IMG/VR virus record: IMGVR_UViG_3300044644_001125
Span: 186,001 to 250,000 of that record
DNA length: 64,000 nt
Direction: 5' to 3' (one strand)
In this document: one piece after another, positions 38,164 to 62,605 of the stretch
How positions within the stretch are numbered: position 1 is the stretch's first letter
Layout: each line of letters begins with the position of its first letter
The notes under the pieces: generated by a model
The model's input: only the letters and a program-made list of their open reading frames with translations
What the model was told of the DNA's origin: nothing
Database searches by the model: none
Translations under genes and position numbers: made by a program

Positions 38164-38243
38164 TTAGGCTCGCGCCTAACGGCGCTCGCAAAGTATCAAA
38201 AGGGTCTATCCAATAGGCCCTTTTCTTTACCCATCGAAAAAGG

Positions 38244-38271
38244 TTGACATCCATTCGATTTTAGGTATAAT
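38244..38271 (+). promoter_or_regulatory. sigma70-type early promoter, Lcl cluster 1
   Basis: TTGACA-16-TATAAT. Confidence 0.8.
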
Positions 38272-38296
38272 ACATACAGTATCAACTACTAGGAGA

Positions 38297-38383
38297 ATGA
38301 AAATGTTTTACACTCTTACTTTTATCGCATTCTTATTTGTTTTCGCTTTTATGCTTGCTGATTTTCTTACGGACTTCGAATGA
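38297..38383 (+). CDS. 28-aa hydrophobic peptide
   Basis: AGGAG SD; MKMFYTLTFIAFLFVFAFMLADFLTDFE; ATGA-coupled to the next gene. Confidence 0.55.
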   Translation: MKMFYTLTFIAFLFVFAFMLADFLTDFE

Positions 38384-38673
38384 ACATCGAAATAGCACCT
38401 ATTGAATTCCAAAAAGAGTTGAGCTGGGAAGATGCCAGGTTGTACTGCTTTTCGTTTACTATTGATGGGAAAATTGGATGGCGTTTACCTACCAATAAGG
38501 AACAAGAGTTTCTAAAATCACAAAACATTGAAAGTTCCGATGAATGGTATTGGACTTCTAACGACGATGGCGACTGGGTAGTATGCTACAACTGGCATTC
38601 CGAACTGGGATCTCATAGCTTTAAAGAACACATTCGTTACGCTAGACCAGTGAGAGATCTAAAAGATAATTGA
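38380..38673 (+). CDS. DUF1566/Lcl-like paralog 1
   Basis: EIAP..SW..A..YC...IDGKIGWRLPT..WYWTS..RPVR. Confidence 0.8.
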   Translation: MNIEIAPIEFQKELSWEDARLYCFSFTIDGKIGWRLPTNKEQEFLKSQNIESSDEWYWTSNDDGDWVVCYNWHSELGSHSFKEHIRYARPVRDLKDN

Positions 38674-38717
38674 ATCAACGCGAGCACCGCTAGGTGCGAG
38701 CTATCAAGGAAAACAGT

Positions 38718-39056
38718 ATGAACATCGAAATAGCACCAGAAAAGTATTGGACTCGCCTATCCTACGATGAAGCAGTATTCTATTGCTTCACGCTAGGTTA
38801 TCGTTTACCAACCGAAAAAGAATTCCTTGAACTCTCAGTTGCTGAATTTAGATTTGAAGGGCCTTATTGGTCTAGTGAACCTCCTCGTCTTGAGTTCAGA
38901 TATGTTTATATTAACTTACAAAAAGGCAGAGGTGGTTGCACCAGTTCACGTGTTAGTAGTAAATGTTTGGTTTTGCCAATTAGAACTAAACAACCTATTC
39001 TCAAAACGCCAAATCTTTTCAAACGGATTATTAACAGACTATGTACATCGAAATAG
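38718..39056 (+). CDS. DUF1566/Lcl-like paralog 2 (divergent)
   Basis: EIAP, YC..LGYRLPT, YWSS, VLPIR. Confidence 0.75.
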   Translation: MNIEIAPEKYWTRLSYDEAVFYCFTLGYRLPTEKEFLELSVAEFRFEGPYWSSEPPRLEFRYVYINLQKGRGGCTSSRVSSKCLVLPIRTKQPILKTPNLFKRIINRLCTSK

Positions 39057-39394
39057 CACCACCCGAATATCAGGTTAAAATGCCACAAAATACAGCAAAG
39101 ATGTATTGTTTCTCCCTTAACATTGACGGTAAGGTAGGCTGGCGTGAACCAACCACAGATGAATTGCATAAGATTTCGAAATCTATAGATTATGATGAAT
39201 GGATTTCTAACCGTGGTTTTTGGAGTTCCGATGGTTATACTATCTTACGTGATTGTTGGTCATTTCCTTGGTCACTTATCAATGACTACGAACTTAATAC
39301 TCCACGTTTGGTAGTCCCAGTTAGAACCCTACCAGAAGTCGGTTGGTTTGGTAGGTTGATCTACAAATGGAACGGATATAGAGAAATCCTATGA
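39041..39394 (+). CDS. DUF1566/Lcl-like paralog 3 (divergent)
   Basis: YCFSLNIDGKVGWREPT, FWSS, VPVR. Confidence 0.75.
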   Translation: MYIEIAPPEYQVKMPQNTAKMYCFSLNIDGKVGWREPTTDELHKISKSIDYDEWISNRGFWSSDGYTILRDCWSFPWSLINDYELNTPRLVVPVRTLPEVGWFGRLIYKWNGYREIL

Positions 39395-39726
39395 ACTTTG
39401 AAACAGCACCGAAGTCAGCAGTAATTGAAGCAAACTACGATGATGCCAGATTCTACTGTATGGCAAACATTGAGGGTAAAACAGGTTGGAGATTACCAAC
39501 TATGGATGAATTGAATCAAATATACCTTGATAATCGATTACAGGTGCAAAAGTTTGAACCAGTTTGTTACTGGTCATGCACTCCGTATAATGTACTCGAT
39601 AACCCAGTTTTTGACAAAGCCGTTTGGACTCAAGATTTCAGAAAAGGATTCCAAACGTATTGCATACCAGGCAAAAACAATATACCATACAATAGGTATT
39701 TTGTATTACCTGTTCGTGATCTCTAA
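39391..39726 (+). CDS. DUF1566/Lcl-like paralog 4
   Basis: GKTGWRLPTMDEL, YWS, VW.QDF..G, VLPVR. Confidence 0.8.
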   Translation: MNFETAPKSAVIEANYDDARFYCMANIEGKTGWRLPTMDELNQIYLDNRLQVQKFEPVCYWSCTPYNVLDNPVFDKAVWTQDFRKGFQTYCIPGKNNIPYNRYFVLPVRDL

Positions 39727-39752
39727 AAGATAATTAAACCAAGGAATCTAAC

Positions 39753-40040
39753 ATGAAAAGCATTGACGTATACAAACCAACCCACGATGATTGGTACCCT
39801 TCATACCAAGTAGAAGGTTGGGATAACCTACAACTTGTTTGTGTTTCCTTTATTCAGACTGGTCCAGATCCAGCAAGGGGGAATGGCCAATGGCGTGTTT
39901 GCGTTTGGGGTGCAGATGATTGCGGTATGGAAAGAGACTACGACGATCGCAGTGAAGCTATGACTATGTTCTATCGCGTTATCAGTTGGGAGTTTGTAGA
40001 CCTTAAGTTGCTACGTGAACATGGGTTTGTTAGTGCATGA
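39753..40040 (+). CDS. hypothetical protein
   Basis: AGGA SD; unrelated to its neighbours. Confidence 0.65.
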   Translation: MKSIDVYKPTHDDWYPSYQVEGWDNLQLVCVSFIQTGPDPARGNGQWRVCVWGADDCGMERDYDDRSEAMTMFYRVISWEFVDLKLLREHGFVSA

Positions 40041-40330
40041 AATATGAAATCGCGCCTAAATCCACTGAAACCTATTTAAATTGGGGTGATGCCCGTTTGT
40101 ATTGTTTTGCTCTTAATATCGATGGAAAAACCGGTTGGCGATTGCCTACTATCAATGAACTTATCGAAATCTATTATTCGCAACATGATTTAAGAATGGA
40201 TAATTACTGGTCATCTACAGTTGCATGTGACGATACCTACGCAGAAATGTTTGCATTTCACAGGCATATCGAACGTAGAGGTTCAAAATCATGGGGTCAA
40301 TACGTTAGAGCAGTTAGGTCTATTGCTTGA
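40037..40330 (+). CDS. DUF1566/Lcl-like paralog 5
   Basis: GWRLPT..EL, YWSST, YVRAVR. Confidence 0.85.
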   Translation: MKYEIAPKSTETYLNWGDARLYCFALNIDGKTGWRLPTINELIEIYYSQHDLRMDNYWSSTVACDDTYAEMFAFHRHIERRGSKSWGQYVRAVRSIA

Positions 40331-40431
40331 GGTTTATTGCTGGTTTTGGGTTATTATTGTGTGTTGCGAGCACCGCTAGGTGCGAGCTTGTTATAATGAA
40401 AAGGGCCCACATGCGTGAGCCCCATTATCTT

Positions 40432-41595
40432 TTAATCCAACCGTTTACATTTCCAGCCGCCTCGATGGGTTTCTCTAACGCCATTGGAAACTTTTTGCAT
40501 ACCTCGGTATGATAAATTATTATCTTTACAGAATTGACGCATATCACCAACTTTGAAAACTTCACCTTGTGGGTTAATGACATCCCAGTAAACTGGTGTT
40601 CGTTCAACTCGATAATTGATACAGGTCCAACCATGATAATGGCGTTGAGAACCAGATGCCACTTTACACATAGCAGAATAACTAAGGTCATGTTCTACAC
40701 AAAACTTTTTAAAATCATCTGGACAATGGACATTGCCATCTGGGTCAGTGGCCTCCCATTTACACATAGTCGTCAGTCGTTCCGTTTCTAAATGCTTACA
40801 CTTCCAACCACGATGTGTATCTTGTCTGCCATTTGATACGTCTTTCATACACCCTGGATTCAATCCATTTTCTCTACAAAAACGTTCAAGATTTTTAATT
40901 TGAAATACAACACCTAACGGATTTGTAAGTTCCCAATGTTGATCGTGAGGATGATCCATCGTGTTTTTATCCAGCTTCACTTTGGTATTTTTGCGAATCA
41001 CTTCTTCACGAACCTCTTGTGGCGTGCTCAAACACACGCAAGTCCATCCTTTGTGATTCGTTATTTTTCCTTTATCAACCGCATTCATACATGATCGATT
41101 TAACCCGTTGTCCCTGCAATATTTTTCAAGATTGTTAATCTCAATAACTTCGCCGGTTGGAGATGTCAATCTCCAGCGTTTAGTTGCTCGAATCTTCGTA
41201 ACCGTGTTGTTTTTCAACCTAGTTTGATACCCTTTCTTCGCACTCTTACTGGTAGTAACAAATTTCACAGTACCACCATTGTCAACACAATGTTTATTCA
41301 ATGAAAGTGGTTCTTTTCGATGTTTCTTGATGATATCCTGTTCGTACCAATAAACCGCATCAACGTCAGTAGATTCAAATATAATCTCATATTCAAATGC
41401 ACCTTTCCCGTATTCATCGATTAATGCTTCGACATAAGTACTACTAGTAAAGTAGTAAATCCAAAAATCATCTTTTGGTAGTCGTTTTCGATCGATATTT
41501 AATTTACGGTATCCGTAATAGAACTGACCTGTTGGTTTGCATACAAGTTTATACACGTATGCTGGCACACCCGTGCCGTTTTGATAAATACTCAT
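40432..41595 (-). CDS. free-standing GIY-YIG/Seg-like homing endonuclease with repeated C-terminal DNA-binding modules
   Basis: YVYKL....G.FYYGYR...YFTSS; four W.L..P.G....NL..FC..NGL...M..V..G...H.GW.C units; TATAAATA at 41653-41660 (minus). Confidence 0.75.
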   Translation of the reverse strand: MSIYQNGTGVPAYVYKLVCKPTGQFYYGYRKLNIDRKRLPKDDFWIYYFTSSTYVEALIDEYGKGAFEYEIIFESTDVDAVYWYEQDIIKKHRKEPLSLNKHCVDNGGTVKFVTTSKSAKKGYQTRLKNNTVTKIRATKRWRLTSPTGEVIEINNLEKYCRDNGLNRSCMNAVDKGKITNHKGWTCVCLSTPQEVREEVIRKNTKVKLDKNTMDHPHDQHWELTNPLGVVFQIKNLERFCRENGLNPGCMKDVSNGRQDTHRGWKCKHLETERLTTMCKWEATDPDGNVHCPDDFKKFCVEHDLSYSAMCKVASGSQRHYHGWTCINYRVERTPVYWDVINPQGEVFKVGDMRQFCKDNNLSYRGMQKVSNGVRETHRGGWKCKRLD

Positions 41596-41703
41596 GCTGA
41601 TGTTTCCTCTAAATGTTAGATTGGTTGGGCTTTACCGAGCCGCGAACCTACTACTATTTATACGGAATACAAAAAAGAGCCCGTTAAGGCTCTTTTTTTC
41701 ACA

Positions 41704-42138
41704 TCAAGAATCTAATTGTTTACATGTCCATCCCTTGTGACTTTTCCTAACTCCCCGTGATACCTTTCCCATAGTAGACGGATCTAAGCCATTTTCTTTA
41801 CAAAACAGTTCAAGATTACGTATTGTGAATGTGTTGCCTTCAGAATTAGTTAATTCCCAAGTTTTGGTATTAGCCTCGTTTGCAGCTGCCATTGATAAAT
41901 TACCATTTGCAATCCGCGATGCCAATGATTTCTGCGCATTTTCTTTGGTTATCCCACGTTCTCTACAAGTTATCGCAGCTTTATCAGCAGCTATCTGAAA
42001 TGTTCCGTTATTAGTTTTAGTAACTTTTGCTTTTGCCGCACCGGTCACATACGAGTTATTAGCCAATCTAGTTTCACGGATCTTTTGTCCAACTGTTTTA
42101 GTTTCTGCTGTGGTTTCTGTATCTTCAGTCATGTTCAC
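41704..42138 (-). CDS. endonuclease-associated repeat-domain protein without nuclease domain
   Basis: One copy of the same W.L...G..F..NL..FC..NGL module. Confidence 0.65.
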   Translation of the reverse strand: MNMTEDTETTAETKTVGQKIRETRLANNSYVTGAAKAKVTKTNNGTFQIAADKAAITCRERGITKENAQKSLASRIANGNLSMAAANEANTKTWELTNSEGNTFTIRNLELFCKENGLDPSTMGKVSRGVRKSHKGWTCKQLDS

Positions 42139-42236
42139 CTCTGATTAATATTCAAAAAGAATTCATATTATACTATATATTCGCGAGGCACGCTAGTGCC
42201 GAGCCATTGAAAAAGGGCCCGAAGGCCCTTTCTTGG

Positions 42237-43793
42237 TTAATCATCTTCACCATAATATCGCAATACTTCTGCAACGACCTTTGATCTTTCAATATCAGAA
42301 TGATTAAAATGAACAATCGAGATTGCTGAATCTGCTTCCTTTGCACTTTCATACAATTCCATGAAATTCCTCAATCCATTACGATCACCCCTATCACTCT
42401 GCGCTAAATCACCCGTAATTATCAATTTACTCGACGAAGCTATTCGAGTAAGAAGCATTTTCATTTGATTGGGTGTGGTTAACTGCGCCTCATCTGCAAT
42501 AATAACTGAATTCTGTAAGTTTCGCCCTCTAAGGCACCCTATTAATGCAAATTCAATAACTTTTTCATTGACATAATGATTTACCGTATCTGGACTCCAA
42601 TTATCTTCAAGTATATCAACGATGCTCAATACATACGGTTCGATTTTATCACGTACTCCGCCCGGTAAGGCACCAATAATTTCATCAGTAGCGTATAGCG
42701 GTCTAGCAATCACCAGTTTATCATATTTTCCCTTTTTTAACTGATCAATTCCATACTGCACTGCTAATAAAGTGTTGTGATTCACAATAAACTCATCAGT
42801 AACATACAGATGATCCTCACTATCAATCAAGATACACTGACATTCTTCCATCTCAGCTTCTACAACTGAGAGCACTGGCATTAACTCTAAAGGACTCTCA
42901 ACGATACTAAACCGAATATGAACACCAGTGTCTTTGATACAAGCAGAACCACCGATAGAACGAACTAAGTAGACAACCGAGTCTTGTAACAAGGCACCAG
43001 CAGTAAAGACTAGGTTACCAGAATCGACAGCATGGATGCTGGTATCGAGTAGACCTTGTAGTAATTTAACTTTTTGTGAACGAGAAGCGTTGAGATATTC
43101 CGCTGGGATAGCTTTATCGTCTTTTAAAAGCATAGTACCTAATTGGAAAGGGTCGATTGGTAGTTCTACATCGTCCATGATTTCGTGTTTAGGTAGGCGA
43201 ATATAAGGCATAATAGAGCCATGATAACGCAGTTTAAGTAGTTCTAGCGTATTGATGACTGCAGGTTTATTATCAATGAATACTTCCCATAGGTGTTCTG
43301 CGCAGGCTAGAGTAGAACGACCATCGTGCAAGGTGATTGAATACGTTTGTTTACTACCTTGTGGGAATAAGCCGACGACATTAGCGGTATTACCATCAGG
43401 AGTAGTGACTTTATCACCTACTGCGATATCACCCATAGTAGTCCACCCGCCAGGGATTTTGATTTTGGAGGTTAGCGGTTGAGCTTTACCAGTACCAGCT
43501 GGACCGATAGCAAAAACAATTTGTTTTTTAGGATTGTTAAGTTCCATTAAGTATTGTTCTTGGCTAAGGTTTTTGGGGTGAATTTGAACCCGTTTACGTT
43601 TAGCAGCCAACCGTTGATCGATTGACATTTGTTGTGGGTCTGGTTGTTGCTGGTGGTTTTGTTGATGGGACTGCTGGTGATTTCTACTGGAGTTTTTACT
43701 ACGGGCTTTTTTGCTTTGGGGTGGGGTGTTTGGTTCATGCGTTTCGTTGAAATACTCGCGTGAATCCGTGTGTCTTGATCTTTTTCTCGTCAT
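42237..43793 (-). CDS. phoH: PhoH-family ATPase with intein
   Basis: GPAGTGK|...|TLLA, IARP, GALPG, RGR, IIADEAQ, RI, ITGD..QSD, DIERS. Confidence 0.92.
   Translation of the reverse strand: MTRKRSRHTDSREYFNETHEPNTPPQSKKARSKNSSRNHQQSHQQNHQQQPDPQQMSIDQRLAAKRKRVQIHPKNLSQEQYLMELNNPKKQIVFAIGPAGTGKAQPLTSKIKIPGGWTTMGDIAVGDKVTTPDGNTANVVGLFPQGSKQTYSITLHDGRSTLACAEHLWEVFIDNKPAVINTLELLKLRYHGSIMPYIRLPKHEIMDDVELPIDPFQLGTMLLKDDKAIPAEYLNASRSQKVKLLQGLLDTSIHAVDSGNLVFTAGALLQDSVVYLVRSIGGSACIKDTGVHIRFSIVESPLELMPVLSVVEAEMEECQCILIDSEDHLYVTDEFIVNHNTLLAVQYGIDQLKKGKYDKLVIARPLYATDEIIGALPGGVRDKIEPYVLSIVDILEDNWSPDTVNHYVNEKVIEFALIGCLRGRNLQNSVIIADEAQLTTPNQMKMLLTRIASSSKLIITGDLAQSDRGDRNGLRNFMELYESAKEADSAISIVHFNHSDIERSKVVAEVLRYYGEDD
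42774..43484 (-). mobile_element. intein in PhoH Walker A (237 aa, Ala1, class-3-like)
   Basis: GK|AQPLTSKIKIPGGW...ACAEHLW...CQCILID...VNHN|T; decayed LAGLIDADG-like LLQGLLDTS. Confidence 0.9.
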
Positions 43794-43965
43794 GCTTTGA
43801 AGTCCTTTTTGGTTGAAGTTTGAACTGCGTTAAGTACTGCACTGCTTGTATTTAGTTATTGGATAGGTTATGATATGCCACGGCTCGCACCTATCGGTGC
43901 TCGCGACAATACACAATAATACAGGCTCGCGAGAATACAATGCAATACAATACAGTAATATATGC

Positions 43966-43993
43966 TTGACATCAGTTATCTTTTAGTTATAAT
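43966..43993 (+). promoter_or_regulatory. sigma70-type early promoter, Lcl cluster 2
   Basis: TTGACA-TCAGTTATCTTTTAGT-TATAAT; near-identical copy at 50432. Confidence 0.85.
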
Positions 43994-44021: not shown

Positions 44022-44288
44022 ATGAAATACTATCAACATACTGTTTACATACGCGAAGATTCCACTGGGTTAACTGCGCATCGTAACGCAGGCGATTCAG
44101 AATGGGGTGAAATAGAAAGCTGTTCTGAAAAACTAGATGTGGTTTGGGTTTGTTGTAATGAGTTTGGTAAGGAAATACATAAAATATACGACAATCGTAT
44201 AGATGCTGAGTCTTATGCCTGTTCTTGCAATCGCTTTAGAGGCGATGATTCTGAAAACGTAATTGTAGAATGTTTGGAAATCCTATGA
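44022..44288 (+). CDS. hypothetical protein
   Basis: AGGA SD, ATG 44022. Confidence 0.65.
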   Translation: MKYYQHTVYIREDSTGLTAHRNAGDSEWGEIESCSEKLDVVWVCCNEFGKEIHKIYDNRIDAESYACSCNRFRGDDSENVIVECLEIL

Positions 44289-44578
44289 ACTTTGAAATAG
44301 CACCAAAAGAAACCGAGATCCAAGCCAACTGGGATGATGCCCGATTGTATTGTTTTGCTCTTAATATTGATGGTAAGACTGGATGGAGATTACCAACCAA
44401 AGACGAATTGAATGAAATATATCAATCAAAAAATGATTTTGAGGAGGAATGGTATTGGTCCTCTACTGAGTGCAATGACGATAACGCCTGGGGTCAGTGT
44501 TTCTACGGCGGAGCCCATTCCGACGGCGATAAGAACTACGGCGACATCTACGTTAGAGCAGTTAGAGATATAACATGA
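44285..44578 (+). CDS. DUF1566/Lcl paralog 6 with DGR-type variable region
   Basis: WSSTE-CNDDN-AW-GQC-F-YG-G...K...YVRAVR; NNC/NNT codons. Confidence 0.88.
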   Translation: MNFEIAPKETEIQANWDDARLYCFALNIDGKTGWRLPTKDELNEIYQSKNDFEEEWYWSSTECNDDNAWGQCFYGGAHSDGDKNYGDIYVRAVRDIT

Positions 44579-46396: not shown

Positions 46397-46405
46397 AAAT
46401 AAAGG

Positions 46406-46517: not shown

Positions 46518-46649
46518 TAATCATATTCTACTCAAAAGCAGTTTACCGAGACCATCTCAAATCCATACCGACACCAAGTCTATTACTCAATTATCTTTTA
46601 GAGACCATCTCAATACTAATTCAATTATCTTTTAGGCACCCGCCAAACT

Positions 46650-47540: not shown

Positions 47541-47686
47541 TCTTTTAAATGGACAGTTACGTCCAAAATCTGGTGGGTTCAATTATCTATTTCATTTCTA
47601 TATGTGCGAGCGCGAATAGCGCGAGCTATCAGAGATACATTCAACAACCAATCCAAAATCGCCTAAATACGACAATAGGAGAATTT

Positions 47687-49554: not shown

Positions 49555-49563
49555 TTTGGGAAT

Positions 49564-50361: not shown

Positions 50362-50431
50362 ATTCAATACCCAGCTATAGTCTGGGTATTCTTTTATTAG
50401 GCTCGCACCTAACGGTGCTCGCAAATAATGG

Positions 50432-50459
50432 TTGACATCGGTTATCTTTTAGTTATAAT
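50432..50459 (+). promoter_or_regulatory. sigma70-type early promoter, Lcl cluster 3
   Basis: TTGACA-TCGGTTATCTTTTAGT-TATAAT. Confidence 0.85.
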
Positions 50460-51261: not shown

Positions 51262-51349
51262 CCTTTAGTATTTTTTGCGAGGCATAAAGCCTAAAAGATG
51301 ATTAATAATAATGCGAGCACCGTTAGGTGCGATTCAATAGGAAAACCAA

Positions 51350-51930: not shown

Positions 51931-52019
51931 CCTTTGGTATTTTTTTGCGAGGCATAAAGCCTAAAAGATGATTAATAATAATGCGAGCACCGCTAGGTGC
52001 GATCCAATAGGAAAACCAA

Positions 52020-52313: not shown

Positions 52314-52400
52314 CCTTTTGGCTTTTTGCGAGGCATAAAGCCTAAAAGATGATTAATAACATTGCGAGCACCGCTAGGTGCGAGCCAATAGGAAAACCAA

Positions 52401-52712: not shown

Positions 52713-52734
52713 ATTTTAATTAAATGGTAGACAA

Positions 52735-53415: not shown

Positions 53416-53443
53416 TTCTCGCGAACCAAACAGGAGACAAAAA

Positions 53444-53740
53444 ATGAACTTTGAAATAGCACCTAAATCGACTGAGATACAAACCAACTGGGAAGAAGCT
53501 AGAATGTATTGCTTTTCTCTTAATATCGATGGTAAGATCGGATGGAGATTGCCAACTAAAGAAGAACTAAACGACATTTATGAATCAGAAAATGATTTTG
53601 AAGAATGGTACTACTGGTCCTCTACTGAGTCCAATGGCTCAAAAGCATGGTTTCAGAATTTCAACGTTGGCCACCAGAGCAGTCACGGCGTTAAGAACAA
53701 CGGCAACATCTACGGTAGAGCCATTAGAGATTTACTATGA
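53444..53740 (+). CDS. DUF1566/Lcl paralog 21 with DGR-type VR
   Basis: AGGAG SD, ATG 53444; patterned 3' end. Confidence 0.9.
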   Translation: MNFEIAPKSTEIQTNWEEARMYCFSLNIDGKIGWRLPTKEELNDIYESENDFEEWYYWSSTESNGSKAWFQNFNVGHQSSHGVKNNGNIYGRAIRDLL

Positions 53741-54042
53741 ACTTTGAAATAGCACCTAAATCAACTGAGATCCAATCCAATTGGGATGATGCCAAGTTGT
53801 ATTGTTTTTCCCTTAATATCGATGGTAAGACTGGATGGAGATTACCTACCAAACAAGAACTGAATGAGATATACCAATCAGAAAATGATTTTGAAAACAA
53901 TTGGTATTGGTCCTCGACCGAGTACTCCTCGACTGAGTACGATGGCATCTTCGTCTGGTATCAGAATATGTCAAACGGAGTTCAGTACAACCGTACTAAG
54001 AACGGCAGCTACTACGTTAGAGCCATTAGATCAATCACTTAA
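53737..54042 (+). CDS. DUF1566/Lcl paralog 22 with DGR-type VR
   Basis: 15-nt tandem duplication (SSTEY x2) at the VR start. Confidence 0.9.
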   Translation: MNFEIAPKSTEIQSNWDDAKLYCFSLNIDGKTGWRLPTKQELNEIYQSENDFENNWYWSSTEYSSTEYDGIFVWYQNMSNGVQYNRTKNGSYYVRAIRSIT

Positions 54043-54056
54043 CCTTTTGGATTATC

Positions 54057-54350
54057 ATGAACTTTGAAATAGCACCAAAATCAACTGAGATAAAAGCAAA
54101 TTGGGATGATGCCAGATTATATTGCTTTGCTCTTAACATAGATGGTAAGACAGGGTGGCGTATGCCATCTAAAGAAGAACTCAACGAGATTTATGAATCA
54201 GTAAACGATTTCGAGAAGGCTTGGTACTGGTCCTCTACTGAGAATAATGGCAACTACGCCTGGGATCAGTTTATGTCGAATGGCTACCAGGCCAGCGGCA
54301 ATAAGAACTACGGCACCTTCTACGTTAGAGCAGTTAGATCAATCCCTTAA
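54057..54350 (+). CDS. DUF1566/Lcl paralog 23 with DGR-type VR
   Basis: Patterned 3' end followed by a hairpin at 54365. Confidence 0.9.
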   Translation: MNFEIAPKSTEIKANWDDARLYCFALNIDGKTGWRMPSKEELNEIYESVNDFEKAWYWSSTENNGNYAWDQFMSNGYQASGNKNYGTFYVRAVRSIP

Positions 54351-54529
54351 CCTTTAGTATTTTTGCGAGCTCCGCTAGGAGCGAGCCAATAAACAATTAA
54401 CCCTTGACTTATCGAATATTCCCTGTATACTACAACTTCGCTACATACTGTAATACAGAAAAACAAACCTTGACTTGTACTAGAAAACAAGTTAAACTAA
54501 CTATAACATTAATAACCTAGGAGTTACGA

Positions 54530-56107
54530 ATGATTGAACCGAGTAAAAACTTACAATCAATCTTTGAGGCAGCAACTGAGATTGCAAAAGAACACAGTCA
54601 TGAGTATATTACTCTTGAACATATTGCGTATGCAATCATGAGTGATCAAGATTCATATAACTTAATCGAAGGTTTTGGAGCAGATGCTAAGTTTATTAAA
54701 ATGAACTTAGATCACTATTTGAAAACCAATTTGGCTGAAATCGTAATCGATGATCCTAATCACGTACCACGTAAAACCAATTCGGTTGACCGTGTATTAC
54801 ATCGTTGCTTTACTCAAGTTGTATTCAGTGGTCGTAATACAACTGAAGTTACTGATGTTATCATTAGTATCTTAAGTGAAAAGAACAGTTTTGCTTACTA
54901 CTTCTTTAATCGTGGTGGTGTTTCTAAAGAAAAGTTTGCTAAACACTTTAATGCCAATCGTGAAGATGGTGACTTGGGTGATCAAGCAGTTGGTAGTGCG
55001 AAAAACCCAGATAAGTTATTGGATGCGTATTGCACTAACTTGAGTGCACTTGCTCGTGATAATAAAATCGATCCAGTTATCGGTCGTGAAACCGAGTTAG
55101 AAGAAATCCAATTGATTCTTGCTCGTAGACATAAGTGTAATGTACTTTTAACCGGTTCGCCAGGCACTGGTAAGACTCAAATTTTTTCTGGCCTAGCCCG
55201 TAAAATTCACGAGAAAGATGTACCTAAGTTTATTCAAGACCACGAAGTTTATTCGCTAGATATTAGTTCATTATTGGCTGGTACTAAGTATCGTGGTGAT
55301 TTTGAAGAACGCATCAAAGGTGTTCTTGCGGCATTAGAGAAAAAAGGTAAAGTAATCTTATTCATTGATGAAGCTCATATGATGCAAGGTGCTGGTGCTT
55401 CAAGTAATAGTGCAAATGACTTATCTAACATGCTGAAACCTTTATTAACTAAAGGTACAATTAAGATTGTTGCTTCTACTACATGGGAAGATTATCGTAA
55501 ACATTTTGAGAATGACCGTGCATTAATGCGTCGATTCCAAAGAGTTGCATTCGATGAACCATCACCAGAAATGGCAGTTAAAATCTTAAAAGGTATTCGT
55601 AAGTATTATGAAGCACATCATAATGTGAAAATTACCAATGCTGCGATTGAACAAGCTGTTAAGTTATCGGTTAAGTACATCAATGACAAGCATCTACCAG
55701 ATAAAGCAATTGACATTATCGATTGTGCATCTGCTCGTTATAAATTGAATGATGATCCAACAACTGAGGGTGTAACTCAAATTGTTGATGTTGAGCAGAT
55801 TTCATTTGAGATTTCTAAGATGCTTGGTATGCCACTCGAAGCAATGACACAGCGTGAAAGTGCTAATATGATGGAACTTGAATCTGTGATGAAAGCCTCG
55901 ATCTTTAATCAAGATAAGGCTATCGATCAATTAGTTGATAAAATCTTCTTATCGCAGGCTGGAATGAAAGCACCTAACAAACCAATTGGTTCATTTTTAC
56001 TAACTGGATCCAGCGGAACTGGAAAATGTCTGGAAAAACAACAACTTATAACAGTGCGGATGAATCCAGACATGCACCGTTTTGCTAAAGCACGTAACCT
56101 AATTTAG
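54530..56107 (+). CDS. clpA: ClpA-like ATPase N-half (499 aa) plus 26-aa split-intein N-fragment
   Basis: Clp_N, DPVIGRE, GSPGTGKT, LFIDEAH, AL.RRF, LPDKAID, GSSGTGK|CLEKQQL...NLI*. Confidence 0.92.
   Translation: MIEPSKNLQSIFEAATEIAKEHSHEYITLEHIAYAIMSDQDSYNLIEGFGADAKFIKMNLDHYLKTNLAEIVIDDPNHVPRKTNSVDRVLHRCFTQVVFSGRNTTEVTDVIISILSEKNSFAYYFFNRGGVSKEKFAKHFNANREDGDLGDQAVGSAKNPDKLLDAYCTNLSALARDNKIDPVIGRETELEEIQLILARRHKCNVLLTGSPGTGKTQIFSGLARKIHEKDVPKFIQDHEVYSLDISSLLAGTKYRGDFEERIKGVLAALEKKGKVILFIDEAHMMQGAGASSNSANDLSNMLKPLLTKGTIKIVASTTWEDYRKHFENDRALMRRFQRVAFDEPSPEMAVKILKGIRKYYEAHHNVKITNAAIEQAVKLSVKYINDKHLPDKAIDIIDCASARYKLNDDPTTEGVTQIVDVEQISFEISKMLGMPLEAMTQRESANMMELESVMKASIFNQDKAIDQLVDKIFLSQAGMKAPNKPIGSFLLTGSSGTGKCLEKQQLITVRMNPDMHRFAKARNLI
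56027..56104 (+). mobile_element. split intein N-fragment (26 aa)
   Basis: Cys directly after the Walker A Lys, then stop at 56105-56107. Confidence 0.8.
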
Positions 56108-57236
56108 CAAAATCTTCAAGAATTACTCGTCTGGTTTCTTGAACACTAGACGAGTACATTTCATATACATACCAACCTTGCATTTCCGCGATTTCTTTTT
56201 TGTACATATCGAATTGATATTTCGCGTCTGCTGTTCTACCATCAAATACCTGACTCCAATTATCCCATTTTTCTTGGTCCCAAATGGGATTTGGGTGGAA
56301 ACATTCACCGTGGTATTCGATGATAATTGCTAATGATGGGATGGTTAAATCGTAGTAGAACCAACGCATTTCGTCTTCGTCAAATATAGCCCATTCTTGG
56401 TTTCCTTCAACCCCAATATAGTATGTTATCTCATACTTATCCAATAGATTTATTATATCCGAAAGAGCAACCAATGATTCGGCACTTGCAGATGATGAAT
56501 TTGTATTTTTACGCTTCCGATTGGCTCGCATATCATTGTATAATCTGGTTCCTTCCTCTATACCATGCTTTGCTATATAAGATTCCAGCGTTGGACTTCG
56601 TTTTTTATTGATTCCCGGTATAGATTCCATGTGGGTTGACCAGTTCTCGTTTCTTTCTTTAAACTTGATAGCACCGAGTTCCTCGCCGTATTTTTTCTGA
56701 TATGTTTCCAATGTATTGGTTGCTTGAACCTGACGCACCAATTCCTTTGCTTCTGCTTCGGTGTATCCTTTCTTAGTCCAATATTTTACATTACGTTGAG
56801 ACACATCATCTCGGCCTCTAGTTTTATCTGCTGATATCAGAGATTTTCTACGCTGAGTTTCACTGGAATGATCGAAGTGTGCAGTTTTCCTAGAGTTAGC
56901 ATCCAAATAAATTATAGTACCATGCATTACGCCATACATTGTTACGTGATAATTTAAGGAACCTATCTTGTACGTTTTTAAATCCAGCCATCTAGCAGCC
57001 CAACCAGATAATCCATACTTAATGAATTTAACAAATGTTTCTCGTCTATCGTTAGTGTATAAACCTTGTTTATCGATTTCTGAAATCTCTTCCAGTTCTG
57101 CTTCGGTTAATGGTCTATCACCAAATGCTTCCTTGTAAAATGGACTGTCCGTTATTCTTGCATGAATTGGTTTAATCAAATCTGGGTTGTATCGTCTTTT
57201 AGTTCTGGCGACAGGTGTTTCAATCGTAGTTTCCAT
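56085..57236 (-). CDS. Vsr-like/PD-(D/E)XK free-standing homing endonuclease
   Basis: Repeated Y..K.G.EEG modules; C-terminal FYYDL.I....IIEYHGECFH...D..K...A...G. Confidence 0.75.
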   Translation of the reverse strand: METTIETPVARTKRRYNPDLIKPIHARITDSPFYKEAFGDRPLTEAELEEISEIDKQGLYTNDRRETFVKFIKYGLSGWAARWLDLKTYKIGSLNYHVTMYGVMHGTIIYLDANSRKTAHFDHSSETQRRKSLISADKTRGRDDVSQRNVKYWTKKGYTEAEAKELVRQVQATNTLETYQKKYGEELGAIKFKERNENWSTHMESIPGINKKRSPTLESYIAKHGIEEGTRLYNDMRANRKRKNTNSSSASAESLVALSDIINLLDKYEITYYIGVEGNQEWAIFDEDEMRWFYYDLTIPSLAIIIEYHGECFHPNPIWDQEKWDNWSQVFDGRTADAKYQFDMYKKEIAEMQGWYVYEMYSSSVQETRRVILEDFAKLGYVL

Positions 57237-57272
57237 AGTTTTATCCTCTTTTGGTTAATTTGTAATATCGTG

Positions 57273-57300
57273 TTGACAAGTAAGATACATATGTTATAAT
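57273..57300 (+). promoter_or_regulatory. sigma70 promoter (extended -10) for the clpA C-half
   Basis: TTGACA-16-TATAAT with TGn. Confidence 0.75.
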
Positions 57301-57339
57301 GAGTCTTCATTCTATTTATTAACCATCAGGAGAGCTACA

Positions 57340-58578
57340 TTGATTACAGAAACACTACCAATTGGAAAAATGTTTGAGATATTGGAACAATATGAGAAAT
57401 TACGCTTCTCCCCAGATCGGGAACAGTTCCTTAATACTCCATTACAAATCCAAAACGAAAACGGCGAATGGATTGACATATCGGCCGCCATTACTAAAGA
57501 AGATACCGGTAGAGAAGTAAGATTCGATAACGGTGATTCGTTAAAAGCTGCTGATAGACATCGCATTTTTAACGGTGAAACCTGCATTTTCTTTGATTCA
57601 CTTAACGTAGGTGATTCTTTGAAAAAAGCTAACGGTGAAACCATCACAGTAACAGAAATTAACACAATCCCAGATACCCTATACTACGACCTTACAGTCG
57701 AGAGTGATACACATTTATACCAAACTGCTAATGGGATCGTCCATCATAACACGGAAACTTGTAGAAAACTAGCAGAAAAGATGCACATGCCATTAGTTCG
57801 TTTTGACATGAGTGAATACCAAGAGAAACACTCAGTGGCAAGATTGATTGGTTCACCTCCTGGTTATGTTGGATTTGAAGACAACGCAGGTCAGTTAATT
57901 ACTAAACTGCAAGAAAATCCACACTGTGTTCTGCTACTAGATGAAATCGAAAAAGCACATCCTGATGTAACAAATATCATGTTACAATTCATGGATAATG
58001 GATTTGTAACTGGTTCTAACGGTAAACAAGCAGATGGTCGTAACTGTATTCTTATTATGACGAGTAACTTGGGTGCTCGTGACAGTGAACGTAATACTAT
58101 CGGTTTTGGTGATTTAGCTAGAACTGGTGAAGATGATAAAGCAATTAACGAATACTTTGCACCTGAATTCCGCAATCGTTTAGATGCTATCATCAAGTTT
58201 GCTCCACTAGAACACAGCACAGTTCTTAAAATCGTGGATAAATTCATTGGTGAGTTAAACGCCCAGTTGAAAGACAAAGATATCTTAATTGAAATCGATG
58301 AAACTACTGCTGAATGGTTAGCTAAACTTGGTTACGATAAGAAAATGGGTGCTAGACCTCTTTCAAGAGTAATCGATACTAAACTGAAAAGTCCATTAAG
58401 TCGTCGTGTTTTATTTGGTGATTTGGTTAACGGTGGTCATGTTAAAGTTACTATTGAAAATGACGAACCCGTTTTCACAGTTTCTGAGTATGTTAAACCA
58501 GTAGTGGAATCAGATCAAAAACTGATCGTTGAAGATGGGCAATTGGTATTAGCTGATGATCACGCAGACGACAACTAA
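57340..58578 (+). CDS. clpA: split-intein C-fragment (137 aa) plus ClpA C-half (275 aa)
   Basis: AGGAG + TTG start; KAADRH (block B), YYDLTV..TH.Y.TANGIVHHN|TETCR; DMSEYQEKHSVARLIGSPPGYVG, LLLDEIEKAHP, PEFRNRLD, GARPL. Confidence 0.92.
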   Translation: MITETLPIGKMFEILEQYEKLRFSPDREQFLNTPLQIQNENGEWIDISAAITKEDTGREVRFDNGDSLKAADRHRIFNGETCIFFDSLNVGDSLKKANGETITVTEINTIPDTLYYDLTVESDTHLYQTANGIVHHNTETCRKLAEKMHMPLVRFDMSEYQEKHSVARLIGSPPGYVGFEDNAGQLITKLQENPHCVLLLDEIEKAHPDVTNIMLQFMDNGFVTGSNGKQADGRNCILIMTSNLGARDSERNTIGFGDLARTGEDDKAINEYFAPEFRNRLDAIIKFAPLEHSTVLKIVDKFIGELNAQLKDKDILIEIDETTAEWLAKLGYDKKMGARPLSRVIDTKLKSPLSRRVLFGDLVNGGHVKVTIENDEPVFTVSEYVKPVVESDQKLIVEDGQLVLADDHADDN

Positions 58579-59215
58579 GAAGTATTATGACAAGTGGCTT
58601 TACAAAGTCACAATAGATGTTAGTCAATACAGTGCTGCGTTGTTAAACTTCAATAAGTTCCGCAATCGTATGAAAGAATTCTGCGAAAACGGTTCTTATT
58701 GTTGGAGTTTTTCCAAACATCAACAACGTTTGTTGAACCTCCATAAAGATGCAATCATTGAATTGATTGATTTTGTAGATATGTATCCAAAAACGGATTG
58801 GACTGCTAGAACGGAATTTGACATTTCTATCTTTACAAATGACGTGAATATGTATAATGCGATGTGTGCTAAGTTTACTGTAATAGAAAGATGGGAACCT
58901 GACTTAACAAATCCTATATTGGATACACCCAATGTTATTTCTGTTAAGAAATTACCTTATGGTAAGTATAGGTTCAAGGTTTTCTTGAAACCACATAAGA
59001 TACTTGATCCAGCTGAAAAGCAGGAATATATCAAGTGGATGAATACACAAGTACCTCGTATTACATTCTCTGAAGCAATCCAAGATTGGATTATGTATAC
59101 AAGATGGTCTGGTGATGCAAGATATATCCTAGTAGAAGATGAACAAACTCTTTTGATGCTAAGGATGCGAAACCAAGCTATTATTGGTAGAATCTACGAA
59201 CATGTCGTAACTTAA
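58556..59215 (+). CDS. hypothetical protein
   Basis: 219-aa ORF overlapping the clpA end. Confidence 0.7.
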   Translation: MITQTTTKKYYDKWLYKVTIDVSQYSAALLNFNKFRNRMKEFCENGSYCWSFSKHQQRLLNLHKDAIIELIDFVDMYPKTDWTARTEFDISIFTNDVNMYNAMCAKFTVIERWEPDLTNPILDTPNVISVKKLPYGKYRFKVFLKPHKILDPAEKQEYIKWMNTQVPRITFSEAIQDWIMYTRWSGDARYILVEDEQTLLMLRMRNQAIIGRIYEHVVT

Positions 59216-59220
59216 CCCCA

Positions 59221-59249
59221 AAGGGTAGTACTCAGGTACTACCCTTTTT
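59221..59249 (+). terminator. Rho-independent terminator
   Basis: AAGGGTAGTAC-TCAG-GTACTACCCTTTTT. Confidence 0.85.
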
Positions 59250-59383
59250 CTTTATGGCTCGTGCCTATCGGCACTCGCTATCCAATATTAGAGTTAAACT
59301 TGTATATATCAATATATACGCATAATATGCGAGCTCCGCTAGGAGCGAGCCTAGAAATACCGAACTTTCAAGCTAAATACGGT

Positions 59384-62604: not shown

Positions 62605-62605
62605 T

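What the first reader, a model, noticed from the sequence alone, without database searches (positions are those of the whole stretch)
38168..59350. Covarying GNTA hairpin marks accessory islands with fixed polarity
Seen: 13 copies of GCGAG-stem-GNTA-stem'-CGAGC, none before 38.1 kb. The inner stems covary: CACC/GGTG, CTCC/GGAG, CGCC/GGCG, GCAC/GTGC, TGCC/GGCA. Loops are GCTA, GTTA or GATA. All four reverse copies (38168, 43883, 50401, 59257) sit at the left edge of an island; three are just upstream of the sigma70 promoter of an Lcl cluster. All forward copies lie after island genes or at the right edge (42183, 47606, 54365, 59329). Core blocks (phoH; 47687-50361; clpA-58556) are thus bracketed forward...reverse. 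Established: DGR targets use a short GC-rich hairpin downstream of the VR. Six copies here follow Lcl genes, but seven do not. Inference: a structure-recognised DNA site that could be a DGR homing signal, a recombination or insertion mark for gene capture, or an N4-style hairpin promoter or boundary element.
Basis: partly seen in the sequence, partly recalled or inferred. Interest (0 to 1): 0.85.

Follow-up and report, generated by a model that had tools for sequence, protein, structure and literature searches.

The report
Dispersed hairpin repeat at phage gene-cassette junctions
A 22-base hairpin-forming DNA word is repeated about 50 times between genes of a 327-kb freshwater jumbo phage and hundreds of times in its relatives, and it marks the places where accessory genes are gained, lost and swapped.

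Summary
All 13 copies lie at the stated coordinates (10 exact, 0 expected by chance), and there are none elsewhere in the window. The window is part of a 327-kb IMG/VR jumbo-phage contig distantly related to Pseudomonas phage PA5oct. The motif recurs in patches across that genome and in about 80 related viral and freshwater metagenome contigs. Of 190 copies picked by flanks and loop alone, 179 have five perfect Watson-Crick stem pairs. They use at least 17 different stems, and G·T wobbles are almost absent.

The motif strand folds as 2 pairs, a tandem G·A/A·G, 5 pairs and a GNTA loop. Copies are intergenic: after terminators, before strong sigma70 promoters, or between small cassette genes.

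Polarity is not fixed. 88 copies point along the next gene and 56 point against it.

Relatives show recombinant joints exactly at the motif (3.5 kb and 630 bp cassettes missing), precise 22-nt presence/absence, and homology breakpoints enriched at the motif.

I found no DGR signature, no N4-type features and no Rfam match.

Best reading: a phage counterpart of bacterial REP elements and T4 PeSLs, a structure-read junction module at which cassettes shuffle. The reader protein, and whether DNA or RNA is read, remain unknown.

The parts
38168..38189 (-). Hairpin repeat copy (stem GCGCC, loop GTTA). It lies 4 nt after the stop of ORF 37819-38163 and 55 nt left of the perfect promoter at 38244.
38680..38701 (+). 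Hairpin repeat copy (GCACC, GCTA). It lies 6 nt after Lcl gene 38380-38673 and just before the next RBS. It is the left partner of the 3.5-kb segment that is missing in the L005 contig.
40366..40387 (+). Hairpin repeat copy (GCACC, GCTA) after Lcl gene 40037-40330, next to the terminator of the GIY-YIG gene. This copy is absent from relatives L022, L023 and L140.
42183..42204 (+). Hairpin repeat copy (GGCAC, GCTA) between the phoH terminator and the HNH-like ORF. It is the right partner of the 3.5-kb missing segment. The orthologous copy in L001 has stem GCACC and loop GATA.
43883..43904 (-). Hairpin repeat copy (GCACC, GATA) in the divergent gap between phoH (minus strand; the copy is sense to phoH) and the promoter at 43966.
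47606..47626 (+). Variant copy (4-bp stem GCGC, loop GAATA) 60 nt upstream of the virion-protein gene at 47687. The ortholog in L015 is a canonical GCTCC/GCTA copy. Homology with L015 ends about 30 nt away.
50401..50422 (-). Hairpin repeat copy (GCACC, GTTA) between the dnaJ terminator (50366-50390) and the perfect promoter at 50432.
51313..51334 (+). Copy with a degenerate 3' flank (CGATT), lying between Lcl paralogues.
51983..52004 (+). Copy with 3' flank CGATC, lying between Lcl paralogues.
52364..52385 (+). Hairpin repeat copy (GCACC, GCTA) between Lcl paralogues. It lies 15 nt left of the point at 52401 where homology with L015 resumes.
54365..54386 (+). Hairpin repeat copy (GCTCC, GCTA) after the last Lcl gene, 17 nt upstream of the promoter-like site at 54404-54431 that precedes clpA.
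59257..59278 (-). Hairpin repeat copy (GTGCC, GATA) after a terminator. It is the left member of a divergent pair.
59329..59350 (+). Hairpin repeat copy (GCTCC, GCTA), the right member of the divergent pair. The 50-nt spacer between the two copies holds promoter-like hexamers.
38244..38271 (+). Perfect sigma70-type promoter (TTGACA-16-TATAAT) next to the 38168 copy.
43966..43993 (+). Perfect sigma70-type promoter next to the 43883 copy.
50432..50459 (+). Perfect sigma70-type promoter 9 nt from the 50401 copy.
38702..42182 (.). Cassette block (Lcl genes plus GIY-YIG and HNH-like endonuclease genes) lying between two direct copies. It is replaced by a single chimeric copy in contig IMGVR_UViG_3300046010_014007 (L005).

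Best explanation
The unit is a lineage-specific dispersed intergenic repeat of a clade of freshwater jumbo myoviruses. Its extended consensus is T-H-GCGAG-NNNC-GNTA-GNNN-CGAGC-C-A.

One strand folds into a compact hairpin: two outer G:C/C:G pairs, a tandem G.A/A.G mismatch, five strictly Watson-Crick pairs and a GNTA tetraloop. The flank and loop letters stay fixed while the stem letters change freely but always in pairs. The element is therefore most likely read by a protein as a folded single strand. I favour single-stranded or extruded DNA over RNA, by roughly 55:45.

Copies sit at the seams between transcription units and small gene cassettes of the accessory (hyperplastic) regions. They are found after terminators, just upstream of early sigma70 promoters, or between cassette genes, in either orientation. 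They serve as portable junctions. Recombination between copies deletes, inserts and swaps the cassettes between them, as proposed for the T4 PeSL elements. The recombination could be homology-driven, using the 22-27 shared bases, or driven by an unknown enzyme.

Shown here: the repeat exists, its stems covary, it is placed at junctions, and cassette gain and loss and chimeric copies occur at the motif. Inferred: that DNA rather than RNA is the folded form, that a reader protein exists, and how recombination proceeds.
For: Non-chance and structure:
- The window has 10 exact copies against 0 expected.
- Of 190 copies defined only by flanks and loop, 179 have 5/5 Watson-Crick pairs. There are at least 17 stems and only one G.T wobble site.
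- On representative copies, 5 of the 7 pairs show changes on both sides. The covariation score is 0.637 against 0.13 in shuffles.
- The fold is -11.8 kcal/mol on the motif strand and -8.8 on the complement with RNA parameters.
- In an unrelated phage contig (L034) the outer helix is extended by TCGA/TCGA, which fits the same fold.

Specific recognition: flank-only matches almost always carry a GNTA loop (190 of 197). The extra conserved letters T(-2) and C(+23)A(+24) are asymmetric.

Lineage: the window is bases 186001-250000 of a 327-kb contig, and the motif lies in patches along it. It is absent from 185,579 bacterial species genomes and from the first 50 kb of PA5oct.

Junction role:
- The L005 copy joins the left flank of the 38680 copy to the right flank of the 42183 copy, with 3.5 kb missing.
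- L021 and L112 lack the 630-bp cassette that lies between two L018 copies.
- Exactly 22 nt are absent in L014 and L019. The 40366 copy is absent in L022, L023 and L140.
- 40 of 346 true homology breakpoints lie within 5 nt of a copy, against 4.4 expected at random. Among intergenic breakpoints the figures are 28 of 117 against 11.2 +/- 3.1, with a maximum of 26 in 1000 draws.
- 47 of 184 unique copies have a strong sigma70 promoter within 90 nt firing away from them, against 14 firing toward.

Cargo next to copies is accessory: Lcl_C paralogues, homing endonucleases, clpP, AraC-like, caspase-like and RlaP-like genes.

Orientation is only weakly tied to transcription (88:56). Several antisense copies lie between a terminator and the next promoter, outside the predicted mRNA. 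This favours DNA.
Against: - No reader protein or recombinase was identified. About half of the 327-kb genome was never fetched.
- There is a sense bias: 61% overall and 68% in the source genome.
- Many sense copies sit about 4 nt upstream of a ribosome-binding site inside operons, so an RNA role is quite possible.
- Only three or four independent junction events were seen.
- The breakpoint statistics reuse related contigs that are not independent, and breakpoints are also favoured at any intergenic site.
- 22-27 bp is short for homologous recombination outside T4-like systems.
- A 5-bp stem is small for cruciform extrusion from duplex DNA.
- Strong sigma70 promoters at 10.4-14.9 kb in the window have no hairpin, so the motif is not needed for promoter function.
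Confidence: 0.5

Rival explanations
1. The element acts primarily in RNA. The hairpin would be an intercistronic or UTR module that blocks exonucleases, defines processed 5' or 3' ends, or is the operator or cleavage site of a phage RNA-binding protein. Recombination at copies would be a by-product of the repeated sequence.
For: - There is a sense bias of 61-68%.
- Many sense copies lie 4-6 nt after a stop codon and about 15 nt before the next ATG, directly 5' of the Shine-Dalgarno sequence.
- The RNA fold is stable and includes the tandem-GA bonus.
- -10-like hexamers and the CTAAAAGATAAT word are enriched 0-30 nt upstream on the same strand, which would place the hairpin at a transcript's 5' end.
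- Bacterial REPs, the closest analogue, stabilise mRNA. This point rests on my own knowledge of the literature.
Against: - 39% of copies are antisense to the neighbouring gene.
- Several copies lie between a terminator and the next promoter.
- G.U wobbles, which are common in selected RNA helices, are nearly absent: one site in about 900 pairs.
- The upstream -10-like enrichment is inflated by the conserved 3' ends of Lcl paralogues.
- No Rfam family matches.
Confidence: 0.28
2. The element is a selfish miniature mobile element. The 22-nt hairpin would be cut out and pasted as a unit by a hairpin-specific nuclease or transposase, in the manner of REP/RAYT or IS200/IS605, encoded elsewhere in the phage or host.
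For: - There is a seamless presence/absence of exactly 22 nt with no target duplication, and a near-precise case.
- Orthologous sites carry wholly different stems (GGCAC against GCACC; the 47606 variant against GCTCC), which looks like replacement rather than stepwise mutation.
- Tandem arrays of 3-5 copies occur.
- Free-standing GIY-YIG, HNH and DUF723 endonuclease genes abut copies.
Against: - No HUH or Y1 transposase was seen in any scanned ORF.
- Very few decayed copies exist, which is unlike REPs and MITEs.
- A single 22-nt hairpin is smaller than any known mobilised unit.
- Only two clean empty sites were found.
- Paralogous gene conversion could produce the same pattern.
Confidence: 0.12
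3. The system is integron-like. The hairpin would be a mini attC-type site recombined as folded single-stranded DNA by a tyrosine recombinase, capturing promoterless cassettes behind a common promoter.
For: - Lcl arrays look like promoter - gene - hairpin - gene - hairpin, with all copies in the sense orientation.
- Chimeric copies occur at cassette deletions.
- The motif shows structure-not-sequence constraint.
Against: - No integrase was found in the window or the scanned loci.
- The site is 22 nt with perfect stems, against 57-141 nt imperfect attC sites with extrahelical bases (attC figures from my own knowledge).
- Orientation relative to genes is 61:39.
- Copies also flank genes that have their own promoters.
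Confidence: 0.06
4. The hairpin is the target-recognition hairpin of a diversity-generating retroelement (DGR) acting on the Lcl (C-type-lectin-like) genes.
For: - Six window copies lie 6-52 nt after Lcl_C genes.
- DGR targets often have this protein fold and a GC-rich hairpin after the variable region (my own knowledge).
- An Mtd_N-domain tail-fibre gene is present at 18770-20455.
Against: - No repeat pair with adenine-specific mismatches exists among the window and all loci.
- No reverse transcriptase was found.
- Lcl paralogues differ along their whole length, at 67-88% identity.
- Most copies genome-wide follow unrelated genes or lie in promoter gaps.
Confidence: 0.02
5. The hairpin is a promoter of the N4 type or of another phage RNA polymerase, with transcription starting at the conserved C-A just 3' of the hairpin.
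For: - The conserved C(+23)A(+24) resembles a start site.
- Many sense copies would give short leaders that contain the Shine-Dalgarno sequence.
- Tandem copies precede clpP.
Against: - 39% of copies would fire into the 3' ends of genes.
- The loop is 4 nt, whereas N4 promoter hairpins have a 3-nt loop (my own knowledge).
- No single-subunit RNA polymerase was seen.
- PA5oct is reported to rely on the host for transcription and to use sigma70-like promoters (PMC7318152).
- Strong sigma70 promoters already serve these units.
Confidence: 0.04

Closest known systems
PeSL (promoter-early stem-loop) cassettes of T4-type phages (Arbiol et al. 2010, PMC2839356; Comeau et al. 2014, PMC4122927)
   Same: Both are short repeated intergenic regulatory words concentrated in hyperplastic regions full of small ORFans. 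In both, a stem-loop lies just upstream of a strong sigma70-type early promoter; here that holds for about a quarter of copies. Both are close to indels and replacements between close relatives, and chimeric elements are left at deletions. In RB49 a crossover was mapped inside the stem-loop.
   Different: The PeSL stem-loop is a generic poly-G/poly-C terminator with A/T tracts, and its conserved part is the promoter. Here the conserved part is a 22-nt hairpin with fixed flanks, a fixed GNTA loop, a tandem G.A and freely covarying stems. It has no T tract, lies beside separate canonical terminators, occurs in both orientations, and three quarters of copies have no adjacent strong promoter.
Bacterial REP / BIME / REPIN elements and their RAYT transposases (PMC3116915, PMC3733652)
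   Same: Both are extragenic palindromes of 20-40 nt at high copy number. Both have a conserved short tag next to a hairpin whose stem varies, occur in both orientations, and form inverted pairs and clusters. Here there is also a mosaic with a second word, CTAAAAGATAAT. Both are thought to be read as folded single-stranded DNA, and both have pleiotropic boundary roles.
   Different: This element is found in a virus and not in any of 185,579 bacterial species genomes. The tag is GCGA...GAGC, not GTAG or CGTC. The stems are perfect rather than bulged. No RAYT gene was found. Direct evidence for cassette exchange at the copies exists here.
Integron attC sites
   Same: Both are recognised by structure rather than sequence. 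Both sit between promoterless cassettes, and cassette loss leaves one hybrid site.
   Different: attC sites are several times longer and imperfect, with extrahelical bases. They have a fixed orientation and a neighbouring IntI integrase (attC properties from my own knowledge). None of these features is seen here.
DGR target hairpin/cruciform downstream of the variable region (Bordetella phage BPP-1 mtd; from my own knowledge)
   Same: Both are short GC-rich hairpins with a 4-nt loop just after the 3' end of a C-type-lectin-fold gene. In both, the stem sequence is free as long as it pairs.
   Different: No RT or TR/VR pair is present. The motif is genome-wide and mostly lies next to unrelated genes.
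Mobile GC clusters of yeast mitochondrial DNA (from my own knowledge, not tested here)
   Same: Both are small GC-rich hairpin-forming elements scattered through AT-rich intergenic DNA in both orientations, with presence/absence polymorphism.
   Different: The sequence, size and host compartment differ. The mechanism is unknown in both cases.

Membership tests
PeSL (T4-type promoter-early stem-loop) | Composite unit: a stem-loop immediately upstream of a sigma70-like early promoter, followed by an SD sequence and start codon | tested here: inconclusive
   47 of 184 unique copies have a promoter matching at least 10/12 within 90 nt and firing away. In 30 of these the -35 hexamer starts 3-27 nt after the hairpin. 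The majority of copies have no such promoter.
PeSL (T4-type promoter-early stem-loop) | The stem-loop is a transcription terminator (G-run/C-run stem with flanking A/T tracts) | tested here: not met
   No T tract follows the hairpin. Separate canonical terminators lie beside several copies.
PeSL (T4-type promoter-early stem-loop) | Concentrated in hyperplastic regions and next to indels or replacements between close relatives | tested here: met
   Breakpoints are enriched at copies. The cargo is accessory. No copies lie in the 38-kb structural and replication block of the window.
PeSL (T4-type promoter-early stem-loop) | Recombination between copies yields chimeric elements and excised mini-circles | tested here: inconclusive
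   Chimeric copies at cassette deletions are seen by comparison. Mini-circles need inverse PCR on infected cells and cannot be tested here.
REP / BIME | Extragenic palindrome of 20-40 nt at high copy number, in both orientations, often in pairs or clusters | tested here: met
   The unit is 22 nt. At least 47 copies lie in the fetched parts of the 327-kb genome. Inverted pairs and arrays are present.
REP / BIME | Conserved GTAG or CGTC tetranucleotide tag at one end | tested here: not met
   The tag is GCGA at the 5' end and GAGC at the 3' end.
REP / BIME | A cognate RAYT (Y1 HUH transposase) gene in the same genome | tested here: inconclusive
   None was found among about 70 ORFs scanned with Pfam or PHROGs. 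About half of the genome and the host are unseen.
DGR target site | A reverse transcriptase and a template repeat that differs from the variable repeat only at adenines | tested here: not met
   No repeat pair has at least 80% of its mismatches at A or T of one partner. No RT was found in the scanned ORFs.
DGR target site | Hairpin placed just after the variable 3' end of the target gene | tested here: not met
   Only 6 of 13 window copies follow Lcl genes. Elsewhere the copies flank many unrelated genes.
Integron attC | A neighbouring tyrosine recombinase (IntI), an attI site and a common promoter | tested here: inconclusive
   No integrase was found in the window ORFs scanned. The whole genome was not available.
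Integron attC | Fixed orientation relative to the cassette array | tested here: not met
   88 copies are co-directional and 56 convergent.
N4-type hairpin promoter | A 5-7 bp stem with a 3-nt loop, co-oriented with the transcribed genes, used by a phage single-subunit RNA polymerase | tested here: not met
   The loop is 4 nt. 39% of copies are convergent with the next gene. No such polymerase was seen. Start sites cannot be tested here.
Rfam RNA families | A match to a curated covariance model | tested here: not met
   No family overlaps any copy at the gathering threshold or at E<=5.

The most novel reading that the evidence does not exclude
The 22-nt hairpin is the recognition site of an undescribed phage-encoded recombinase or nuclease that acts on single strands. 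This enzyme cuts and rejoins at the base of the hairpin. It would move the hairpin itself seamlessly and would capture or excise gene cassettes between copies. That would make it a minimal, integron- or REP/RAYT-like gene-shuffling system in jumbo phages, with the smallest known mobile DNA unit.
Probability: 0.15. Interest if true: 0.85.

Novelty: new variant of a known kind. Interest (0 to 1): 0.62.

Why it matters
It has long been unclear how large phages reshuffle their accessory gene regions without destroying the regulation of neighbouring genes. The T4 PeSL model is the only worked example. This element offers a much sharper handle on that question.

It is a short, unmistakable, structure-constrained word. 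It can be found by pattern search in metagenomes, it marks cassette junctions, and natural chimeric and empty sites are already visible.

It also suggests that REP-like, structure-read repeats are not confined to bacterial chromosomes. If a dedicated reader enzyme exists, it would be a new tool-like recombination system. If none exists, the element is still a clean model for recombination driven by short homology and for the function of boundary hairpins in phage genomes.

Tried and rejected
- **DGR.** A BLAST screen of the window against all loci for repeat pairs with adenine-biased mismatches found none.
- **Host repeat or CRISPR-repeat mimic.** The commonest variant is absent from 185,579 bacterial and archaeal species genomes.
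- **Known RNA family.** Three Rfam searches gave nothing at the copies.
- **Characterised relatives.** There is no near DNA match in 50,697 phage records. The early 50 kb of PA5oct has no such hairpin, and the PA5oct paper does not mention one.
- **Terminator.** No T tract follows the hairpin, and proper terminators sit alongside.
- **Loop letter tracking orientation.** In the window GCTA looked sense-linked and GTTA/GATA antisense-linked. This is not significant in the larger set: GCTA is 50 of 88 co-directional copies and 24 of 56 convergent copies.
- **Chi-like polarity.** Orientation follows the genome arm, but this is confounded with gene direction, and a hairpin is not expected for Chi.
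- **Type III antitoxin arrays.** Tandem 34- and 45-nt arrays exist, but the downstream gene is clpP and not a ToxN-like toxin.
- **Shared partner gene with unrelated motif-bearing phages.** blastp of their ORFs against the clade found nothing informative.
- **Upstream promoter reading into the hairpin.** -10-like hexamers are enriched upstream. Much of the signal comes from the conserved 3' ends of Lcl paralogues, and only 7 of 184 copies have a full promoter pointing at them.
- **Literature searches** for a described phage hairpin repeat of this kind found only the PeSL and REP work.

Full report
**Observation.** The pattern GCGAG-N4-GNTA-N4-CGAGC occurs 10 times in the window, against 0.00 expected in dinucleotide shuffles. 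Allowing two mismatches adds the copies at 51313 and 51983, which have altered 3' flanks. The copy at 47606 is a variant with a 4-bp stem and a GAATA loop. A relaxed scan finds no further copy before 38168 or after 59350. A census of every GC-rich hairpin with a 5-bp stem and 4-nt loop finds 19 in the window, against 0-2 in shuffles. Twelve of them are this motif, with identical flanks and a GNTA loop. One correction to the description is needed. GCGA and GAGC are not complementary throughout. On the motif strand they form G:C, C:G and a tandem G.A/A.G mismatch, and on the complement the mismatch becomes T.C/C.T. ViennaRNA predicts ((..(((((....)))))..)) at -11.8 kcal/mol for the motif strand and -8.8 for the complement with RNA parameters. 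With DNA parameters only the 5-bp stem is predicted. From my own knowledge, C-GNNA-G tetraloops and Py-GA-Pu tandem sheared G.A pairs are unusually stable in DNA as well as RNA. I did not test this.

**What the window is.** The window encodes ribonucleotide reductase, tail-fibre proteins, a clamp loader, phoH, DnaJ and ClpA/B-like proteins, among others. The clamp loader is 53% identical to that of Pseudomonas jumbo phage PA5oct. No phage record is close at the DNA level. Motif searches in IMG/VR showed that the window is bases 186001-250000 of contig IMGVR_UViG_3300044644_001125, which is 327,256 bp long.

**Distribution.** Two IMG/VR scans and one metagenome scan returned 145 loci. In the source genome the motif occurs in patches at about 32, 80, 93-111, 124-126, 147-163, 224-245 (this window), 255, 261 and 319-327 kb. 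At least 47 copies lie in the fetched parts. The stretches in between, where no copy was hit, include the structural and replication block that fills the first 38 kb of the window. About 80 related viral and freshwater metagenome contigs carry it. The commonest variant is absent from one genome each of 185,579 bacterial and archaeal species. The early 50 kb of PA5oct has no such hairpin. A few unrelated phage contigs carry the same consensus: L034 at 53% GC, with an SPP1-type portal, and L043/L064 at 64-69% GC. In L034 the outer helix is lengthened by TCGA/TCGA, as the fold predicts.

**Structure constraint.** Of 190 unique-context sequences chosen only by GCGA-N5-GNTA-N5-GAGC, 179 have five Watson-Crick pairs, 8 have four and 3 have three. 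Flank-only matches carry a GNTA loop in 190 of 197 cases. At least 17 stems are used. Only one wobble (T.G) site was seen. On 33 representatives, five of seven pairs show changes on both sides and none shows a one-sided change. The covariation score is 0.637 against 0.130 in shuffles and at most 0.113 for slid partners. Those rows were pre-selected for pairing, so one search is the unbiased figure. The motif extends asymmetrically: T at -2 in 75% of copies, not-G at -1, C at +23 in 78%, and A at +24 in 62%. Orthologous sites in relatives whose flanks are 82-94% identical keep an intact motif but often with another stem. Examples are 42183 GGCAC/GCTA against L001 GCACC/GATA, 40366 GCACC against L001 GAGCC, and the 47606 variant against L015 GCTCC. 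Among the closest ungapped orthologues, single base pairs change on both sides together. Fixed flanks and loop, free but strictly paired stems and very few decayed copies together point to recognition of a folded single strand by a specific factor, and to selection acting on the copies in place.

**Placement and polarity.** Copies are intergenic. In the window the reverse copies at 38168, 43883 and 50401 lie 10-62 nt left of perfect TTGACA-16-TATAAT promoters. The usual order is gene, terminator, reverse copy, promoter, gene. Forward copies lie between Lcl_C paralogues of about 97 aa, 4-6 nt after the stop codon and about 15 nt before the next start. Over all unique copies, 47 of 184 have a strong sigma70 promoter within 90 nt firing away from them, and 30 of those start 3-27 nt after the hairpin. 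Fourteen have one firing toward them. Tandem arrays of 3-5 copies precede the promoter of a phage clpP gene. 88 copies are co-directional with the next gene and 56 are convergent. In the source genome, 19 are sense and 9 antisense between co-directional genes. Loop identity does not separate the two classes. Strong sigma70 promoters at 10.4-14.9 kb lack the motif.

**Link to gene turnover.**
- (i) In contig IMGVR_UViG_3300046010_014007 a single copy (L005, position 218) has the left flank of the window's 38680 copy and the right flank, including the phoH terminator, of the 42183 copy. The 3.5 kb between these two direct copies is missing. It holds Lcl genes plus a SegE-like GIY-YIG gene and an HNH-like gene.
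- (ii) L021 and L112 have one copy with the upstream flank of L018 position 4971 and the downstream flank of L018 position 5601. A 630-bp one-gene cassette is therefore missing.
- (iii) At that same site, L014 and L019 lack exactly the 22 nt, with no target duplication.
- (iv) The window's 40366 copy is absent from L022, L023 and L140.
- (v) I counted homology breakpoints that do not resume within 150 nt. Of 346 such breakpoints, 40 lie within 5 nt of a copy, against 4.4 expected for random positions. Among intergenic breakpoints, 28 of 117 do so, against 11.2 +/- 3.1 for random intergenic positions, with a maximum of 26 in 1000 draws. The contigs are related, so these are not independent events.

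Genes next to copies elsewhere in the genome are typical accessory cargo: clpP, a caspase-like peptidase, an RlaP-like nucleotidyltransferase, two AraC-type HTH proteins, an AlgH-like protein, and DUF723 and GIY-YIG endonucleases.

**Rivals tested.**
- DGR: no repeat pair with adenine-biased mismatches. No reverse transcriptase was found in the scanned ORFs. An Mtd_N-domain tail-fibre gene exists at 18770-20455, but nothing links it to the motif.
- N4-type promoter: the loop length is wrong, 39% of copies point into gene ends, and no phage polymerase was seen. PA5oct is reported to rely on the host for transcription and to use sigma70-like promoters (PMC7318152).
- Known RNA family: none matches.
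- RNA-level role: this remains a serious rival. There is a sense bias, many copies lie immediately 5' of ribosome-binding sites, and the word CTAAAAGAT lies 12-32 nt upstream on the same strand in 62 of 185 copies, against about 10 expected. -10-like hexamers are enriched 0-16 nt upstream in both sense and antisense classes. Part of this signal comes from the conserved 3' ends of Lcl paralogues. Only 7 of 184 copies have a full promoter reading into them.
- Against RNA: the antisense and non-transcribed placements, and the near absence of G.U pairs.

**Comparison with known systems.** The nearest described system is the PeSL of T4-type phages. These are repeated stem-loop-plus-early-promoter cassettes in hyperplastic regions. 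They mediate modular shuffling and mini-circle formation, and one crossover was mapped inside the stem-loop (PMC2839356, PMC4122927). The present element shares the location, the promoter neighbourhood of a subset of copies, and the chimeric junctions. It differs in that the conserved, covarying part is a specialised non-terminator hairpin that occurs in both orientations and mostly without a promoter. In form it is closer to bacterial REP/BIME elements, which have a tag plus a hairpin, occur in both orientations, and form pairs, clusters and mosaics. However, it lacks the GTAG/CGTC tag, no RAYT gene was found, and it lives in a virus. I therefore file it as a new variant of a known kind, not as a member of either family.

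**Verdict.** Fixed polarity, a DGR role and an N4-type promoter are not supported. The reader protein, the folded molecule (DNA or RNA) and the recombination mechanism remain open.

Noticed in passing
window, 55 sites; e.g. 35726-35817, 46591-46635, 47169-47534: A second over-represented word, CTAAAAGATRA (often extended to CTAAAAGATAATTGAA), has 55 matches with up to 1 mismatch, against 4.9 expected. It occurs on both strands, at gene 3' ends in different reading frames, inside the spacers of two perfect sigma70 promoters on the opposite strand, and in arrays in non-coding DNA. It lies co-oriented 12-32 nt upstream of the hairpin in about a third of copies. Its function is unknown.
   Followed up: partly
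window 46396-47690: A 1.3-kb non-coding region holds a full-length Rfam Polynucleobacter-1 RNA match (46703-46853, 68 bits against a 37-bit threshold). It also holds five iteron-like repeats CGCACATACATTTTA (47220-47375) and eight CTAAAAGATAA words in both orientations. It could be an origin or a regulatory hub, and it hints at a Polynucleobacter-like freshwater host.
   Followed up: partly
window 56016-57781: The ClpA/B-like gene is split into two ORFs (54530-56107 and 57340-58578) by a 1.77-kb insertion that is absent from relative L015. The insertion carries a reverse-strand 383-aa ORF of unknown function (PHROG 22677). It also carries a perfect extended -10 sigma70 promoter (57273-57300) that could drive the downstream half. 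This is a genes-in-pieces arrangement like endonuclease-split genes in T4-like phages.
   Followed up: partly
window 40432-42138 (minus strand); L001 1210-2613: Free-standing SegE-like GIY-YIG (387 aa) and HNH-like (144 aa) endonuclease genes lie between two hairpin copies. Relative L001 has a different 467-aa SegE-like gene in the same slot. DUF723 proteins sit next to hairpin arrays in L024 and L102.
   Followed up: partly
window 42237-43793 (minus strand): phoH is unusually long (518 aa). The PhoH domain is confined to residues 341-514, and there is a weak Hint-domain match at residues 120-157, so an intein is possible.
   Followed up: no
window 38380-40330, 44270-46396, 50485-54350: About 20 tandem paralogues of a 95-103 aa Lcl_C (C-type-lectin-like) protein are present, at 67-88% DNA identity. 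Their copy number differs between relatives: L015 lacks 51139-52401, and L022 has two extra copies.
   Followed up: partly
window 16471-16541: ARAGORN calls a tRNA-Phe with the unusual anticodon AAA.
   Followed up: no
window 18770-20455: A 561-aa protein has an Mtd_N domain, the N-terminal domain of the major tropism determinant that is the Bordetella phage DGR target. No RT or template repeat was found in the sequence held.
   Followed up: partly
window 61226-61909 and 62546-63418: Two paralogous ART-PolyVal ADP-ribosyltransferase-domain proteins are encoded here.
   Followed up: no
L034 3247, 6559, 7807; L043 1125; L064 8839: The same hairpin consensus occurs in unrelated, higher-GC phage contigs (53% and 64-69% GC). 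There it sits within longer repeats, and a second covarying hairpin lies just upstream in L043/L064. The motif may therefore be older or more widespread than the jumbo-phage clade.
   Followed up: partly
window 49564-50361, 54530-58578; L102 5423-6019: The phage encodes its own proteostasis set: DnaJ, a ClpA/B-like ATPase and ClpP.
   Followed up: no
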